Sequence record: MK250017.1
Length of the DNA stretch: 64,000 bases
Strand: one strand, 5' to 3'
Numbering within the stretch: position 1 is the stretch's first letter; each line of letters starts with the position of its first letter. A program made the translations under genes and the position numbers. Positions 35,278 to 53,631 of the stretch are shown here, piece by piece. The notes beneath the pieces are model-generated. The model was not told where the DNA came from. It saw only the letters and a program-made list of their open reading frames with translations, and searched no databases.

Positions 35278-35615
35278 TTAATCAATAGTACCATCAAGAA
35301 GTTTATGAACTGCATCTTGACGTGTTTTACGAATTTCTGCAAGTGTAAACTCTTTTACAAGCTTACCGTCTTCAAACACCGTCTTCAATTCATTCTTATC
35401 TGATGCTTCATCTTCAATAGAAACTCGATCAATAGGTTTATAATTACCATTTTCATCCTTTACAACCATAATAAGACCACGATGTGATTTCTTTGGTGTA
35501 CCAGTAACAGTCTTTGGATCTTTAAAGATCTCTATCTGCTTATTATCTACTTTACACCATGTTGCCTTACATGCAAATGCAAGTTGGTCACGGGTGTTCA
35601 TTTGATAGGAAAATG
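35278..35615 (-). CDS. nadV: Nicotinamide phosphoribosyltransferase, exon 2
   Basis: Spliced junction restores LGIGSFSYQMNTRD; KDP..KKSHRG; joined CDS 1584 nt = 528 codons. Confidence 0.85.
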
Positions 35616-36992
35616 CTTAGAAATATTGCTTTATATGTTCATAAATATTATCAGTAAATAACTCAGAAGAATATGTTGTATATTTCCTAATATTTTTATA
35701 TTCCTATAAAATTTGTTGTTCTATACAAAATGCAGTATAAAGTTCATATTGTTTATAATATAATATCTCTATATCTAATACAATACTAGAATTACGCAAT
35801 GCAGATGAACGTAATGAACGTATTCTCTACTTTGGTGTTTCTTTTTTTGTTATACCTATTTTATAAAGTATTTGGTTATTTGTTTTATCAATAACTTTTA
35901 AATAATATAATATTCCTATATGTGATTTTTGTTCAGGATGATTATTAAACCAATCTATATTATATCCACCTGGTACATATCCATTTAATATAGTTCTTTC
36001 TATTTTACATTTAGGACATTCCTAACCTGCATTTAGAAATTTAGAAATTCTTTTTTCAAAAATCCCATGTTTTGGACAAATAATCTAAATTTTAGATTGT
36101 TTTGTTTTATAAATGTCTCTATTGCTTTCTGGATATGTATAATAATCGCCATATTTTTCTTTACACATACCAATAATCTAATCATATGTAAATGATTTAT
36201 GTAATGCTCTCATTTTATTACCACATAATGGACAACCATTTTTATTGCCGTTTATTATATGTGTACGAGCTAATACATTAAAAGCACCATGTATAGGACA
36301 GATAACCGTTATTTCTGAATTTACTAATCCGGTCCAGTTATCTAAATTATATGTAAATTTATTATTATATTTTTTATTAGCTATTTCTAAAAATTCTTCT
36401 TTTGTTATTCTGGATTCAATTTGAGCTTTTTTATTTGCTAATGTTCCCTTGTATGTTTTATCTTTATATTTCTATGCACACATTGGACATCCAAATTTAT
36501 TTCTTAAATGATCCATCGGGCGTTGCCAGAATGTTCCATGTTCTGGACAAATTATTTCAACTGGAGTTCGCATAGTTATATATTTTACTTTACTATAATC
36601 AAACTTATTATTGAATAATTTTTCACCTCTATTTATGAAACTTTGTTTATAAAACTCATTTCCACGGACTATTTCTTCACCCTCATCATTACATGCTAGG
36701 GGCAAGGCGCTTCCACCATTATTGGAATCTAATGGCGTACTCCCCGAAGGGATAGTCTCTGAACCTTCCTAATGAGTAGTCAATTCATTAGGCTTGGCTG
36801 CAGATTCTTGTACTATATTTTCTATTAAATTATCTGACATCTAAAAAGTATTTTTATGTTTCATTTTATTTATCGTGATAATAAAATATAAAATATGAAT
36901 ATACACATTCCTGCAATTCACCTTGTTATTCAATGCCACTTACGCAGCAAGGGAGCCATTTTTACAATCTGCCTCAACAGCAGTGTACGCTA
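35616..36992 (-). mobile_element. Group I intron in NAMPT
   Basis: Exon 1 ends in U and the intron ends in G; P AATTGCAGGAA, Q AATCTGCAGC, R TCAGAGACTA, S AAGAAATAGTCC; IGS AAAATG-G-CTC (36953-36962) pairs both exons. Confidence 0.92.
35617..36840 (-). CDS. Intron-encoded endonuclease (three CPxHG..CPxC Zn-ribbon repeats + YKIGIT GIY-YIG-like domain; TAG=Gln)
   Basis: Frame open from ATG 36840 (or 36864) to TAA next to the 3' splice site. Confidence 0.8.
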
Positions 36993-38238
36993 ACCCAATT
37001 CCCAAAATCAAATTAGTAGCAGCAAACATCTTATCTTCAAGTTGCGCATAAATCATTCTTTGACGTTTCATATTGATAGAATCACCATAAAGAAGTCCAA
37101 TATGTGTATCAAGTACTTTATATCCCTTCTTATTAAATGTTCCACCAAATGTATTCCAAAGAAATTCATATGAACCCATCTTTACAAATTGATCATTTGC
37201 TTCTGAATCACCACAAATAATCTTTACAGGATCACCACTATCAGGACGGATAACTACTCGACCATTTCGACTCATAATCTGTTCCTTATACTTAGGTACG
37301 ATCTTTGTAATAAAATACCAGTAATCATAGCCGTCTGCTACAATAGAAATAATACCATCAGGAAATTCATCAAGCATTCTCTTAAAATAAATTTCATCAT
37401 CTGGAATACCAGAATCATTTGTTGCATTTGAACATTCCACTGAATGTTCTGTTGCAGGTACTGTAGCTGCAATTAATTCTTTCTTAGGATCTGCTTTATA
37501 ATAGTATTCAATCATTTTAATTGCAGGTACTGATTCAGAACCGCAAAATGATGTAAGATGTGCCATGCCTGAAGTGATTGTAGTTTCAAGAGAACTCATA
37601 CCTCTCATTGAAAAATCATGACACAAGAAATCAAGGTTAGACAAATCATTAGGATTATAAAAACCTGTTTTCATTGCATGTCTAACAAGTTCACGTCTAT
37701 AAACATCTGAAATTGTAGCGGATGTCATTGGTTGCCACAAAATATTTGAAAGAATAGACTCCAAATAATTAGTAAGCCAAGCAAAATCAGGATGTGTGTT
37801 TGTGATTGTCAAAACAGGACATCCGATTGGACAATATGAACCTTCAGGAAGTGCCTTAATTCTAATAGGGAGATAACCAAGCTTATGCAAAGCAATAATA
37901 TGATCTACTCCTACTTTCTTTGCAACTGCTTCACCAAGAAATGATGTAGTTAAATCAGTATATGTTTTTCTAACAGTATCTTCATCAAGGTTAAAGAAGA
38001 AATTATTAAACGTATTAATAAGATACTTCTTGATAAAATACTGAATACCAAATACAACTACACCTTCATTTGCCTCTGGGAGGTACTTATTTCCTCGTGG
38101 TGTAAAATTACTAAAAAGTTGTGTCATTCCCTTAGGATACATACAGTGATGACCAAGCTTGTAGCCATCAGTCATAAGCATTGCATTGAGAAGTATGTCT
38201 TCTACCATTACATGCTGAGAATCTTTTACGTTTGTCAT
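36993..38238 (-). CDS. nadV: Nicotinamide phosphoribosyltransferase, exon 1
   Basis: TDGYKLGH, HDFSMRG, VPATEHSV, IRPDSGDP, YGDSI motifs. Confidence 0.92.
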
Positions 38239-50230: not shown

Positions 50231-50351
50231 TATTATGCTTTTATTTAGTTTTTATATTTATTATATATAAAAATAGGTAATATGTTTATGAAAAATACAT
50301 ATTACCTATCAAACAAAATTAAACAATTAAATATATATATTATGAAAAATG

Positions 50352-50744
50352 TGGAGACATCCGGAGTCGAACCGGAGTATTACTAACTTGTCAATAATAA
50401 ACTATCTACGTGCGTATTTCTTAATTAGTTTTCATCATACATTCTTAGGAGTTAAACAGTTTAATGTCGTAATCACTCTTATTGGACAAAAAGTATAGTG
50501 AGTTTTATTTAACAGAGAAAACACTCACCGAACTCCGTGGCGATGCTCAACTTACCTTGTAAGGAGCAAATGCTTCAATGGGTTTATATTACCAATCCTA
50601 CCGGATTAAGCTGCCATACGAAAATCAATTTCGTCGTCATTTAAATTTATTTGCTAAATTTCTTTGTATTACTACAAAAGGCTTTTAACTTTCCTACACG
50701 ATTTATTACCACATAATTAATAAGCAAAACCAAAAAATGTCCCC
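50352..50744 (-). ncRNA. ssrA: tmRNA
   Basis: 5' GGGGACA pairs 3' TGTCTCC (G3.U70); T arm CCGG-TTCGACT-CCGG; tag frame DDEIDFRMAA* at 50606-50638. Confidence 0.92.
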
Positions 50745-52614: not shown

Positions 52615-52652
52615 AATTGTAAAAAATTAAAAATATTACTAATGTCATGTCG

Positions 52653-52724
52653 TTGGGGATCCGAGACTCGAACTCGGCCTAAGAGTTTTAGAGACTCCTG
52701 TACTGACCACTATACTAATCCCCA
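52653..52724 (-). tRNA. Amber suppressor tRNA (anticodon CTA), Gln-like
   Basis: TGGGGAT/ATCCCCA (U1-A72, G2-C71, G3-C70); loop CT-CTA-AA; canonical T arm. Confidence 0.92.
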
Positions 52725-52754
52725 ATACTATATTTTAATTTACATAACTATTAA

Positions 52755-53525
52755 TTATTCTATATAATCGCTTAATTTCTATTTGTAATGATAATATGTT
52801 GATTTACATACATTATATTTAGTTAAAAAATCTGATTCTGATATATTATTTACAATATCATTCTTCATATCTACTGTTAATTTACTGCAGCCATTAGAAT
52901 TAAATAACTATATTTTCTAATTATATTTAGATATTTTCTACATTAATTCTTGTTTATCACGTGATAATATATATCGTTTTTTAACTAAAAGATTACTGAC
53001 ACTACCTCTTGTAAAATTAACATTCATATCACGTTTTAATTGTTGTAATGATGTAGATGAAACAATATTCTTTGTATTTACATCATAACAATATATTGTA
53101 TGCCTTCCATCATTCTATTTTTCATATGATTTTTTCTAAACTATTAATTTCTATTCATCTGTGAATTTATATCCATCAATACCACCATCACCACCTTTTG
53201 TTTGATTATAACCAGTAGCTCCATAACTATTATATTTACGAATATACTATTTTTCTAATAGATCTAATTGTTGTTTTATATCAGACGTGATATAATTATC
53301 AAATGTTTTTAATATATATAATGAAAAGGAATCTATACCATATTTCTTAAATGCTTTATATATTGGCGCATTATATCTATTATTAACAGAATTATTAATA
53401 TGATGTAATAATCTTTTATGTAGATTTATACTCTAACCAATATAACACTTTTTATTTATATCATTCTAAATCATATAAATACCCGGACACTATGGTATAT
53501 TATTTATAATATCATCTTTACTCAT
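52755..53525 (-). CDS. GIY-YIG homing endonuclease, Seg-like (TAG=Gln, ~11 TAG)
   Basis: Absent from the track; GIYMI..YIGQSINL..R..LEKQYI..GYNQTKGG; 256 aa. Confidence 0.9.
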
Positions 53526-53557
53526 AATAATTTTTAATATTTAATAACCATATTTTG

Positions 53558-53631
53558 TAGCCCCACTCAGATTCGAACTGAGTCAGCGAAAGTTAGAGTT
53601 TCGAATGCTTAAACCATTACATCATAGGGCA
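53558..53631 (-). tRNA. Second amber suppressor tRNA (anticodon CTA), Gln-like
   Basis: TGCCCTA/TGGGGCT (U1.U72 mismatch); CGAAA-CTCTAAC-TTTCG; CTCAG-TTCGAAT-CTGAG. Confidence 0.92.

What the first reader, a model, noticed from the sequence alone, without database searches (positions are those of the whole stretch)
35617..36875. Intron endonuclease ORF is read straight through the ribozyme catalytic core
Seen: from ATG 36840 (or 36864), in an AT-rich insertion between P and Q, the frame stays open through Q, R/P7, P8 and S for ~55-60 codons. It is open only because the TAG at 36769-36771 is read as Gln, and it ends at TAA-G on the 3' splice site. A late-type GATAAATA (36868-36875) sits just upstream. 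Established: T4 intron endonucleases use internal late promoters, and ORF creep into intron cores is known. Inference: recoding permits the dual coding, and amber termination keeps ribosomes off the core early so that splicing is protected.
Basis: partly seen in the sequence, partly recalled or inferred. Interest (0 to 1): 0.7.

Follow-up and report, generated by a model that had tools for sequence, protein, structure and literature searches.

The report
Endonuclease gene read through its ribozyme
A self-splicing intron in a gut megaphage's NAD-salvage gene carries a homing-endonuclease gene whose reading frame starts inside the ribozyme and runs through most of its catalytic core, an unusually deep RNA/protein double coding that is conserved in related phages whether or not they reassign the TAG stop codon.

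Summary
The window is Prevotella phage Lak-A1. Its minus-strand NAMPT gene is split by a 1377-nt group I intron (36992..35616), and Lak-A2, C1 and B lack it at exactly this junction. With TAG read as Gln, a 407-codon homing-endonuclease ORF runs from ATG 36840 to TAA 35619-35617, one base before the terminal G. It encodes three DUF723 zinc-finger repeats and a T5orf172 nuclease domain.

The ATG lies in the AU-rich P5 loop. The first 58 codons are the strands of P5', P4'(Q), P6, P7(R), P7.1, P7.2, P3', P8 and P7'(S). P9 closes around the ORF body, so both ORF ends are ribozyme helices.

Seven diverged relatives in the same NAMPT site keep an ATG at the same place and a stop-free frame. Their helix length changes preserve the frame while the helices covary. 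No other conserved start exists: M123 lies inside the first zinc-finger repeat and is Ala in most relatives.

Four relatives use the standard code and show the same overlap with CAG or GAG where Lak-A1 has TAG, so recoding does not enable it. GATAAATA has no support as a promoter. Amber gating of endonuclease synthesis is plausible and has a published precedent, but it is untested.

The parts
36993..38238 (-). NAMPT (nicotinamide phosphoribosyltransferase) exon 1. It ends in ...GGGU and has no in-frame TAG.
   Evidence: Pfam NAMPT_N plus NAPRTase profile positions 1-175 of 239. Lak-A2 has an uninterrupted 526-aa NAMPT.
35616..36992 (-). Group I intron, 1377 nt, IA-type (P7.1 and P7.2 present). 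The 5' splice site follows U 36993 and the terminal G is 35616.
   Evidence: Intronless alleles in Lak-A2, C1 and B join exactly here. Rfam scores 46.2 bits. Helices covary. An RNA-library contig skips exactly 35616..36992.
35278..35615 (-). NAMPT exon 2, starting CAUUUUCC. It has no in-frame TAG.
   Evidence: Pfam NAPRTase profile positions 179-238 of 239. The junction restores GIG-S-FSYQ as in Lak-A2.
36953..36962 (-). Internal guide sequence. AAAAUG (36962-36957) pairs with the start of exon 2 (P10). GCUC (36956-36953) pairs with the exon 1 end GGGU (P1, with the U.G pair).
   Evidence: P1 and P10 covary among relatives, for example CAUUCU/AGAAUG in L014 and CAUUUA/UAAAUG in L015.
36934..36949 (-). 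P2 hairpin with a GUAA loop. The loop holds UAA 36942-36940, which stops the exon-1 frame 17 codons into the intron.
36919..36925 (-). P3 5' strand, CAAGGUG.
   Evidence: Seven base pairs with 36709-36703. Compensatory changes occur in the lineages outside the A1/L205 pair.
36910..36916 (-). P4 5' strand (element P).
   Evidence: Pairs with 36803-36796.
36809..36907 (-). P5 and its AU-rich L5 extension, which holds the ORF start. No stable fold is predicted.
   Evidence: Fold z-score -1.2. The ATG lies 147-167 nt from the 5' splice site in all 8 family sequences.
36838..36840 (-). Proposed start codon of the homing-endonuclease ORF.
   Evidence: Homologous ATG in 7 relatives. In 5 of them it is the first start, 1-7 codons after an in-frame stop. 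A public gene call for the 94%-identical variant begins here (P0001).
35617..36840 (-). Homing-endonuclease ORF: 407 codons plus TAA, with 7 in-frame TAG codons read as Gln. Codons 1-58 are encoded by the ribozyme core.
   Evidence: dN/dS of the ORF body is 0.13.
36796..36803 (-). P4 3' strand (element Q), read as S-A-A.
36768..36792 (-). P6 hairpin. Its 3' strand contains the in-frame TAG 36771-36769 (ORF codon 24).
   Evidence: Covariation. The same codon is TAG in A1, L205 and L010, CAG in L015 and L016, and GAG in L012, L014 and L112.
36753..36765 (-). Element R with the P7 5' strand (GACUA 36757-36753), read as G-S-E-T.
36741..36752 (-). P7.1 tetraloop hairpin, UCCC-UUCG-GGGA.
   Evidence: Covaries with UUCC/GGAA and UCUC/GAGA in relatives.
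36714..36737 (-). P7.2 hairpin.
   Evidence: Covariation. The hairpin is 24, 21, 18, 21, 12 and 18 nt across lineages, always a multiple of 3.
36703..36709 (-). P3 3' strand, CGCCUUG. It contains TTG 36705, the only canonical start between the P6 TAG and the first zinc-finger repeat.
   Evidence: The TTG is not conserved in any lineage outside the A1/L205 pair and lies within P3.
36680..36702 (-). P8 hairpin.
   Evidence: Covariation.
36666..36678 (-). Element S with the P7 3' strand (UAGUC 36671-36667), read as E-E-I-V.
36648..36663 (-). P9 5' strand, read as R-G-N-E-F-Y-K. The confidently folded protein begins here.
   Evidence: Duplex with 35635-35619, -12 kcal/mol, z=-4. It covaries in relatives. 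pLDDT rises above 85 from residue about 60.
35619..35635 (-). P9 3' strand, which encodes the C-terminal ...KQYF and the first base of the stop codon.
35995..36648 (-). Three DUF723/CapR-like zinc-finger repeats (CPxHG...GCPxC), presumed to bind DNA.
   Evidence: Pfam DUF723 E=4.8e-13. Cys and His are invariant in the family alignment.
35656..35913 (-). T5orf172 nuclease domain (GIY-YIG superfamily).
   Evidence: Pfam 25.1 bits against a cut-off of 20. YY, YKIG, R and E are invariant.
52652..52724 (-). Suppressor tRNA, anticodon CUA.
   Evidence: ARAGORN and Rfam.
53557..53631 (-). Second suppressor tRNA, anticodon CUA.
   Evidence: ARAGORN.

Best explanation
**What it is.** A mobile IA-type group I intron interrupts the NAMPT gene of Lak-A1. 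It carries a T5orf172/DUF723 homing endonuclease whose body sits in the loop closed by P9.

**Where the frame runs.** The reading frame does not start next to the protein's folded part. It starts at AUG 36840 in the unstructured, AU-rich L5 extension. It then reads through the 3' strands of P5 and P4, all of P6, P7, P7.1, P7.2, P3', P8, P7' and the P9 5' strand. That is about 190 nt and gives a 58-residue disordered leader. The frame ends in the P9 3' strand, one base before the 3' splice site.

**Shown.**
- The intron boundaries.
- The helices, with covariation.
- The conserved ATG, the stop-free frame and the frame-preserving helix length changes in seven lineages.
- Purifying selection on the endonuclease.
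- Frozen synonymous sites in the leader.

**Inferred.**
- This is an extreme 5' 'core creep'. An endonuclease gene that entered L9 lost its own start and adopted the nearest accessible AUG in a peripheral loop. Free-standing relatives sit beside intact NAMPT genes.
- A ribosome on this frame must unwind the catalytic core, so splicing and endonuclease translation are mutually exclusive on any one RNA molecule.
- In Lak-A1 the 7 in-frame TAGs, the first at codon 24, tie endonuclease synthesis to the phage's suppressor tRNA(CUA). The TAG-free NAMPT exons can be translated under the host's standard code.
- The amber codons add a layer in recoded lineages. They are not what makes the overlap possible.
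For: - **Identity.** 100% match to Lak-A1.
- **Boundaries.** Intronless Lak-A2, C1 and B alleles join exactly at 36993|35615. The Pfam NAPRTase profile is split 1-175 / 179-238. A metatranscriptome contig skips exactly 1377 nt.
- **Ribozyme.** Rfam E=4e-10. RNAalifold recovers P2, P3, P4, P6, P7.1, P7.2 and P8 with compensatory changes in 27 of 53 pairs. P1, P10 and P9 covary.
- **ORF through the core.** Homologues P0001, P0002, P0008, P0010, P0013, P0021 and P0036 (45-94% identity) all begin at the same alignment column. All carry the core-encoded leader SAAKP...EGSETI...DEGxxIV.
- **Frame.** The ATG lies 147-167 nt from the 5' splice site in all 8 sequences. There are no TAA or TGA in frame, against 1-9 stops in the other frames.
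- **Lengths.** R-to-S is 93, 90, 87, 90, 81 and 87 nt, all 0 mod 3. Q-to-R is 36, 27 and 24 nt. L015 has one extra base there, and its ATG lies in the frame that restores the downstream reading.
- **Chance.** Shuffles give P(open)=0.015-0.075 per lineage. Controls are open in 13 of 136.
- **No alternative start.** L010 has no ATG, GTG or TTG between the P6 TAG and the first repeat. TTG 36705 and M123 are not conserved.
- **Leader is disordered.** AlphaFold2 gives pLDDT below 50 for residues 1-58 and above 85 from about residue 60.
- **Selection.** The ORF body has dN/dS 0.13 and dS 0.22. The leader has 1 difference in 174 nt and dS 0.
- **Code.** Two tRNA(CUA) genes. TAG usage is bimodal: NAMPT 0, endonuclease 19 per 1000, and TAG-rich genes are depleted of CAG. 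Code 15 is published for Lak phages (PMC6784885).
Against: - There is no direct evidence of translation initiation: no proteomics, ribosome profiling or mapped 5' ends.
- The leader's amino-acid conservation is explained by RNA constraint, so it does not prove translation.
- A non-canonical start inside or just after S cannot be excluded by sequence, for example the conserved AUA of AUAGUC.
- The seven lineages share ancestry, so their stop-free frames are not fully independent.
- The RNA contig joining the exons carries exon-2 variants that an intronless allele type also has. It may therefore come from an intronless strain rather than from splicing.
- In L012 and L013 the ORF has no stop before the 3' splice site. 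That fits translation from unspliced RNA, not from the excised intron.
- In Lak phages TAG is also used in replication genes, which weakens a strict early/late reading.
Confidence: 0.78

Rival explanations
1. One reading: TAG recoding is what allows the double coding, and its purpose is protective. Early in infection ribosomes terminate at the amber codon in P6, so the catalytic core stays ribosome-free and NAMPT mRNA splices. Late in infection the suppressor tRNA lets ribosomes read through, and the endonuclease is made.
For: - In Lak-A1, L205 and L010 the frame contains TAG in the P6 3' strand.
- NAMPT exons have 0 TAG. The endonuclease has 7 in 407 codons and no CAG.
- Two tRNA(CUA) genes lie in the window.
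- Borges et al. proposed the same logic for a TGA-rich intron endonuclease in Agate phages.
- Early I-TevI translation harms td intron splicing (Gibb and Edgell, as cited in PMC3073962).
Against: - Standard-code relatives L012, L015, L016 and L112 have the identical architecture with no TAG in the ORF. Recoding is therefore neither necessary for the overlap nor its origin.
- The TAG is at codon 24. Ribosomes have by then passed through P5', P4' and most of P6.
- L014 is recoded but has GAG at this codon.
- In Lak phages alternative coding is not confined to late genes.
Confidence: 0.25
2. The leader is not translated. The true start lies downstream of the core, at TTG 36705, a non-canonical codon at or after S, or the ATG at 36573. 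The open frame upstream is then chance plus gene-caller habit.
For: - Edgell et al. warn that extensive ORF/core overlaps may be mispredictions.
- The leader is predicted disordered.
- Free-standing relatives start about 10 residues before the first repeat.
- In other intron lineages of this class, such as the GIY-YIG genes in L034, L045 and L176, a start after S is the better call.
Against: - TTG 36705 is part of P3' and is absent from every lineage outside the A1/L205 pair. M123 is inside repeat 1 and is Ala in most relatives.
- L010 and L112 have no canonical start between P6 and the domain.
- The frame is stop-free in 8 of 8 sequences, and helix lengths are kept in multiples of 3.
Confidence: 0.08
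3. The endonuclease is translated from a separate transcript that starts at a promoter inside the L5 extension, as with T4 intron late promoters. Such an RNA lacks P1 to P4 5' and cannot form a ribozyme, so translation never competes with splicing. This is compatible with the ORF boundaries proposed here.
For: - A roughly 100-nt AU-rich insertion precedes the ATG in all lineages.
- T4 intron ORFs use internal promoters.
- In L012 the ORF runs past the 3' splice site, which requires unspliced or independent RNA.
Against: - No conserved promoter-like motif is present. GATAAATA is neither enriched nor conserved.
- Contigs cannot show RNA 5' ends.
Confidence: 0.2
4. The intron ORF is expressed by coupling to exon 1. 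It is in the exon-1 frame, separated only by UAA 36942-36940, which is followed directly by GUG. This would mean termination and reinitiation, or readthrough, as in the fused mitochondrial intron ORFs.
For: The frame is the same, and it is open from 36939 under TAG=Q.
Against: - Relatives have TAA or TGA between this point and their ATG: 1-6 codons upstream of the ATG in L010, L014, L015 and L112.
- 33 open codons in this composition occur by chance about 1 time in 6 (own estimate).
Confidence: 0.04

Closest known systems
Phage T4 td intron with I-TevI (GIY-YIG)
   Same: A phage IA-type group I intron in a nucleotide-metabolism gene. It carries a GIY-YIG-superfamily endonuclease whose ORF overlaps core helices. 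Endonuclease translation must be restrained for splicing to work (PMC3073962).
   Different: I-TevI sits in the P6 loop, and only its last 20 nt enter P6a/P7. Here the ORF body sits in L9, about 190 nt of its 5' end are core, and its 3' end is the P9 3' strand. I-TevI is controlled by an RNA hairpin over its ribosome-binding site and a late promoter. Neither was found here.
'Core creep' examples in Edgell, Chalamcharla and Belfort 2011, Table 1 (e.g. Synechococcus lividus LSU intron, 81 nt; B. thuringiensis nrdF, 56 nt)
   Same: The endonuclease ORF extends into ribozyme helices through adoption of an alternative start or stop codon.
   Different: The overlap here is more than twice the largest listed. 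It covers almost the whole 3' half of the core plus P9. Frame conservation and covariation across seven lineages support it, which answers that paper's caveat about mispredicted ORF ends.
Agate-phage group I intron endonuclease rich in recoded TGA (Borges et al., bioRxiv 10.1101/2021.08.26.457843)
   Same: An intron endonuclease with in-frame recoded stops sits inside a gene compatible with the standard code. That paper inferred delayed endonuclease synthesis.
   Different: The phage clade and the codon differ (TGA=Trp against TAG=Gln). No ORF/core overlap was described there.
Fungal mitochondrial group I intron ORFs fused in frame to the upstream exon
   Same: Ribosomes read through ribozyme helices to reach the endonuclease or maturase domain.
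   Different: Those ORFs start in the exon and are processed by proteolysis. Here an in-frame UAA in L2 separates the exon from the intron frame, and the ORF has its own AUG in L5. The setting is also a bacterial-type one with coupled transcription and translation.
T5orf172 homing endonucleases of ICP1 vibriophages (Barth et al. 2023, PMC10448857)
   Same: The same domain plan: repeated CapR/DUF723 zinc-finger DNA-binding modules with a T5orf172 nuclease. They mark boundaries of genetic exchange, like the exon-2 mosaic patch seen here.
   Different: The ICP1 genes were studied there as homing endonuclease genes in the phage genome, with no ribozyme overlap described. This one is intron-encoded and shares its sequence with a ribozyme.
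Free-standing endonuclease next to its target gene (F-CphI/psbA; Bonocora and Shub 2009; Zeng et al. 2009, cited)
   Same: Relatives of this endonuclease are free-standing beside intact NAMPT genes (L017, L018). This is the arrangement proposed to precede formation of a mobile intron.
   Different: No cleavage specificity has been tested for any of these proteins.

Membership tests
Group I self-splicing intron | The 5' exon ends in U, paired to G of an internal guide sequence (P1). The intron ends in G. P10 pairs with the 3' exon. | tested here: met
   GGGU/GCUC with a U.G pair, terminal G at 35616, and CAUUUU/AAAAUG. P10 covaries in L014 and L015.
Group I self-splicing intron | Conserved core helices P3-P8 and the P/Q/R/S elements, supported by covariation. 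| tested here: met
   RNAalifold on 8 sequences gives 27 of 53 pairs with compensatory changes in P2, P3, P4, P6, P7.1, P7.2 and P8. R and S match the Rfam consensus.
Group I self-splicing intron | Score at or above the Rfam RF00028 gathering threshold. | tested here: not met
   46.2 bits against 50, E=4e-10. The shortfall is explained by the long L5 and the P7.1/P7.2 insertions, which the model does not align.
Group I self-splicing intron | Precise removal restores the host reading frame. | tested here: met
   Intronless Lak-A2 and C1 alleles read GIG-S-FSFQ across the junction. An RNA-library contig skips exactly 1377 nt.
Group I self-splicing intron | Guanosine-dependent self-splicing activity. 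| not testable with these tools
   Needs an in vitro splicing assay.
Subgroup IA (phage-type) introns | Extra helices P7.1 and P7.2 following P7. | tested here: met
   Two covarying hairpins, 36752-36741 and 36737-36714, lie between P7 and P3'.
GIY-YIG superfamily / T5orf172 homing endonuclease | Pfam T5orf172 domain above its cut-off, with the conserved Tyr, Arg and Glu core residues. | tested here: met
   25.1 bits against 20. YY, YKIG, R372 and E407 (440-residue numbering) are invariant in 12 sequences.
GIY-YIG superfamily / T5orf172 homing endonuclease | Site-specific cleavage of the intronless allele and homing. | not testable with these tools
   Indirect evidence only: patchy presence among near-identical Lak genomes, and a divergent patch of 24 differences in 89 nt next to the insertion site.
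Genetic code 15 (TAG = Gln) in this genome | In-frame TAG within conserved domains, a suppressor tRNA(CUA), and TAG aligned with Gln codons. | tested here: met
   The DUF723 and T5orf172 domains continue across TAGs. Two tRNA(CUA) genes. TAG aligns with CAG at the P6 codon. TAG-rich genes lack CAG. Published for Lak phages.
T4-type late promoter | TATAAATA positioned upstream of the ORF, used by a phage late sigma factor, and enriched at late genes. | tested here: not met
   The site reads GATAAATA at 36874-36867. The motif class occurs 34 times against 57 +/- 8 expected. It is absent at the same place in relatives.

The most novel reading that the evidence does not exclude
The L5-initiated, core-spanning frame may be a selected switch rather than an accident of core creep. 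Because the ribosome must melt P4-P6, P7, P3 and P8, each transcript is committed either to splicing (NAMPT) or to endonuclease synthesis. In TAG-recoded phages the amber codon inside P6 would then make that choice depend on the state of the cell's genetic code. If so, the same 'leader through the core' module may serve unrelated nucleases: HNH_3 genes in L021 and L190 show the same leader.
Probability: 0.3. Interest if true: 0.8.

Novelty: new variant of a known kind. Interest (0 to 1): 0.62.

Why it matters
Overlap between intron endonuclease genes and ribozyme cores is known, but it is usually short and often doubted as an annotation artefact. Here about 190 nt, covering most of the 3' half of a catalytic core, must satisfy two constraints at once: keep the base pairs and keep an open frame. 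Natural variation across seven lineages shows both constraints acting, through compensatory pairs and helix length changes in multiples of 3.

This gives a clean system for asking how translation and RNA catalysis are kept apart on one bacterial-type transcript. Matched standard-code and TAG-recoded versions also allow a test of whether a phage's code switch gates a selfish element.

The work also adds a protein-gene intron and a homing endonuclease to Lak megaphages. Their deposited records are unannotated, and the published description mentions only tRNA introns.

Tried and rejected
- **Close relatives in IMG/VR.** A search with the endonuclease protein found none.
- **The window's own assembly.** It is not held for the genome search.
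- **First model of P3'.** I first placed P3' directly after P7 (UCCCUU) and took the UUCG hairpin for P8. Covariation among relatives rejected this. The hairpin is P7.1 and P3' is CGCCUUG at 36709-36703.
- **A local P9.** A local hairpin just after S in Lak-A1 was dropped in favour of the long-range pairing with the intron's last 17 nt. That pairing is the one that covaries.
- **Sequestered start codon.** Folding the L5 region to look for an I-TevI-like hairpin over the AUG gave z=-1.2, and no such pairing is conserved in relatives. Nothing is claimed.
- **RNA evidence for splicing.** The exact joint is present in a pig-gut metatranscriptome. Its exon-2 variants fit both an intron-bearing strain (L205 type) and intronless strains (A2 type). 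Contigs give neither strand nor ends, so the result is not decisive.
- **Wider screen.** Among 160 introns sharing the R and P7.1 motif, about 20 have long frames open through R to S. In the GIY-YIG cases (L034, L045, L176) an ATG after S is the better start. L184 and L157 are frames open into exons. The HNH_3 cases (L021, L190) also have possible GTG or TTG starts after S. Generality beyond the NAMPT family is therefore not established.
- **Not used.** The count of structure pairs (it needs a long typed structure string), complex prediction and fold search.
Full report
**Identity and gene context.** The window matches Prevotella phage Lak-A1 (MK250015-18) at 100% identity. The deposited record has no annotation. 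On the minus strand an ORF of 432 codons (38238..36940) carries NAMPT_N and the first 175 of 239 positions of the NAPRTase profile. A downstream frame (35615..35278) carries positions 179-238. Lak-A2 and Lak-C1 (exon 1 99% identical) and the Lak-B phages join window positions 36993 and 35615 directly. Lak-A2 then encodes one 526-residue NAMPT reading ...LILGIG-S-FSFQMNTRD.... The inserted 1377 nt, 36992..35616, therefore behave as an intron. The 5' exon ends in U and the insert ends in G.

**The insert is a group I ribozyme.** Rfam's Intron_gpI model matches 36894..36657 with 46.2 bits (E=4e-10), just below its gathering score of 50. Homologues of the intron ORF led to seven further introns in the same NAMPT site, GGGU|UA:
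- L205, whose endonuclease is 94% identical to Lak-A1's.
- L010/L011.
- L012/L013.
- L014.
- L015.
- L016, which is the same as L183.
- L112.

RNAalifold on these eight sequences recovered P2, P3, P4, P6, P7.1, P7.2 and P8. Compensatory changes on both sides occur in 27 of 53 pairs. P3 is a clear example: CAAGGUG/CGCCUUG in Lak-A1, CGGUGUG/CGCAUCG in L010, GGAAUUG/CGGUUCC in L012 and AUCGGUG/CGCCGAU in L014. The guide sequence AAAAUG-GCUC (36962-36953) pairs with exon 2 (P10) and exon 1 (P1). P10 covaries: CAUUCU/AGAAUG in L014 and CAUUUA/UAAAUG in L015. The order P7, P7.1, P7.2, P3', P8, P7' marks a phage-type IA intron.

**P9 encloses the gene.** The 16 nt just after P7' (36663-36648) pair with the last 17 nt of the intron (35635-35619) at -12 kcal/mol, z=-4. 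The equivalent pairing covaries in relatives:
- AAAAGAU/AUCUUUU in L014.
- GAAAAAAUC/GAUUUUUUC in L015.
- AGAAAAC/GUUUUCU in L016.

It always ends 1-4 nt before the splice site. The ORF body therefore lies in L9, and both strands of P9 are coding.

**The ORF.** With TAG read as Gln, the frame is open from 36939 to TAA 35619-35617.
- **Domains.** Pfam finds DUF723 zinc-finger repeats and a T5orf172 nuclease domain above its cut-off. This is the plan of the T5orf172 homing endonucleases described in ICP1 phages (PMC10448857).
- **Folded part.** The conserved protein begins at about residue 96-101 of the 440-codon frame, which is right after element S.
- **No start near the domain.** Between S and the first repeat there is no ATG, GTG or TTG.
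- **The ATG at 36573 ('ITMRTP').** It lies inside repeat 1 and is Ala in most relatives.
- **TTG 36705.** It forms the last three bases of the P3' strand and is absent from every lineage outside the A1/L205 pair.

**Comparative test of the start.** Seven homologues at 45-94% identity all begin at the column of ATG 36840. They share a leader, SAAKP...EGSETI...DEGxxIV, that is simply Q, R and S translated. At the DNA level:
- **Position.** The ATG sits 147-167 nt from the 5' splice site in all eight sequences.
- **First start.** It is the first start, 1-7 codons after an in-frame stop, in five lineages.
- **Stops.** The ORF frame has no TAA or TGA from the ATG to beyond S in 8 of 8 sequences. 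The other frames have 1-9 stops.
- **Chance.** Composition-preserving shuffles leave such a stretch open with P=0.015-0.075 per lineage. Among 136 other introns sharing the R and P7.1 motif, only 13 are open in this frame.
- **Lengths.** R-to-S is 93, 93, 93, 90, 87, 90, 81 and 87 nt, all multiples of 3, although the P7.2 hairpin ranges from 12 to 24 nt. Q-to-R is 36, 27 or 24 nt. In L015 one extra base in P6 is offset by an ATG in the matching frame.
- **No fallback.** L010 has no canonical start between the P6 TAG and the first repeat.

These are the marks of selection for an open frame laid over selection for base pairing. I take ATG 36840 as the start rather than 36864, which has no counterpart in relatives.

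**Nature of the leader.** AlphaFold2 on the family alignment gives pLDDT below 50 for residues 1-58 and above 85 from about residue 60, so the fold starts where S ends. Between Lak-A1 and L205 the ORF body has dS 0.22 and dN/dS 0.13, so the gene is functional. The 174-nt leader has a single difference and dS 0. That is what RNA constraint on every codon position would produce. Free-standing relatives start about 10 residues before repeat 1. Two of them lie beside intact NAMPT genes (L017, L018).

- **TAG is sense in Lak-A1.** The domains continue across TAGs and two tRNA(CUA) genes are in the window. TAG-rich genes lack CAG. Code 15 is published for Lak phages.
- **Contrast within the gene.** NAMPT has no TAG. 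The endonuclease has 7 in 407 codons.
- **The P6 codon.** Codon 24 (36771-36769, P6 3' strand) is TAG in Lak-A1, L205 and L010. It is CAG in L015 and L016 and GAG in L012, L014 and L112.
- **Standard-code relatives.** L012, L015, L016 and L112 translate under the standard code and have the same core-spanning ORF.

So recoding tolerates an A-U pair at that P6 position. It does not create or enable the overlap. A ribosome stopping at this TAG has already passed P5', P4' and most of P6, so 'keeping ribosomes off the core' can only be partial. The general idea that recoded stops postpone intron-endonuclease synthesis was proposed for Agate phages. It remains plausible and untested here.

**Promoter claim.** GATAAATA lies at 36874-36867. 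The motif class KATAAATA occurs 34 times in the window against 57 +/- 8 expected. It is not conserved in relatives. I give it no weight.

[quoted passage not shown] In run X16 one contig joins 35615 to 36993, skipping exactly 1377 nt. Its exon-2 variants are shared by an intron-bearing strain (L205) and by intronless strains (A2). This fits splicing in vivo but does not prove it.

**What is known and what is new.** Edgell et al. (PMC3073962) named 'core creep' and listed overlaps of 9-81 nt. They cautioned that large overlaps may be mispredictions. The present case has about 190 nt at the 5' end plus the P9 3' strand at the 3' end, and comparative evidence backs it. I class it as a new variant of a known kind. 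The Lak-A1 NAMPT intron itself appears undescribed: the Lak paper reports only tRNA introns.

**Mechanism: shown and inferred.** The architecture, its conservation and the dual constraint are shown. Three further points are inferences:
- Translation and catalysis exclude each other on one RNA.
- The AUG sits in L5 because that is the nearest unstructured site.
- In Lak-A1 the amber codons tie endonuclease synthesis to suppressor tRNA activity.

L012/L013 lack a stop before the 3' splice site and run 12 codons into exon 2. This points to translation from unspliced or independent RNA, at least in that lineage.

Noticed in passing
L001:1962-2897 (Lak-A2), also L002 and L205:3579-4514: Lak-A2, C1 and the L205 strain carry a free-standing 311-residue LAGLIDADG-type ORF with 6 in-frame TAGs directly downstream of NAMPT. 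Lak-A1 lacks it at that place. NAMPT therefore neighbours two different homing-endonuclease types in sister genomes.
   Followed up: partly
L017:1009-2004 and L018:2501-3565: Free-standing relatives of the intron endonuclease (46% and 40% identity) lie next to uninterrupted NAMPT genes. This is the arrangement proposed to precede formation of a mobile intron.
   Followed up: partly
window 35527-35608 (-): Lak-A1 and Lak-A2 differ at 24 of about 89 positions of exon 2 just downstream of the insertion site, yet are almost identical beyond it and in exon 1. L205, which has the intron, carries the A2-type patch from 35596 on. This is a recombination mosaic at the endonuclease site.
   Followed up: partly
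window 36940-36992 (-): The exon-1 frame runs 17 codons into the intron, through P1 and the guide sequence, before a UAA in the GUAA loop of P2. The intron ORF is in the same frame as exon 1, and GUG follows that UAA directly.
   Followed up: partly
L012:3660-3703 and L013 (same sequence from a second sample): In this standard-code relative the endonuclease ORF has no stop before the 3' splice site (UUUGAG|CAU). It ends at a TAG 12 codons into exon 2, so the excised intron would be a non-stop mRNA.
   Followed up: no
window, all ORFs of at least 150 codons: TAG use is bimodal. About 32 genes have none and about 20 have 2-43 per 1000 codons. Most TAG-containing genes have almost no CAG.
   Followed up: partly
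window 50349-50744 (-): A phage-encoded tmRNA gene (Rfam 54 bits, above its gathering score).
   Followed up: no
window 52652-53631 (-): The two suppressor tRNA(CUA) genes flank the most TAG-rich ORF of the window (52755-53525, 43 TAG per 1000 codons). The first tRNA has a UGGGG... acceptor stem with U1-A72, like bacterial tRNA-Gln (the comparison is from memory).
   Followed up: no
L021:3435-4103 (-) and L190:190-840 (+): Related introns in other genes carry HNH_3 endonucleases whose longest frames also start upstream of Q and read through R and S (leader ...SSQA..EGSETI..GEDIV). GTG or TTG starts after S are also possible in these.
   Followed up: partly
L005:2501-2632 (crAss-like phage cr116_1): A core of the same intron class (72% identity over R to S) lies between two pieces annotated as major capsid protein. 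This points to an unannotated intron in that gene.
   Followed up: no
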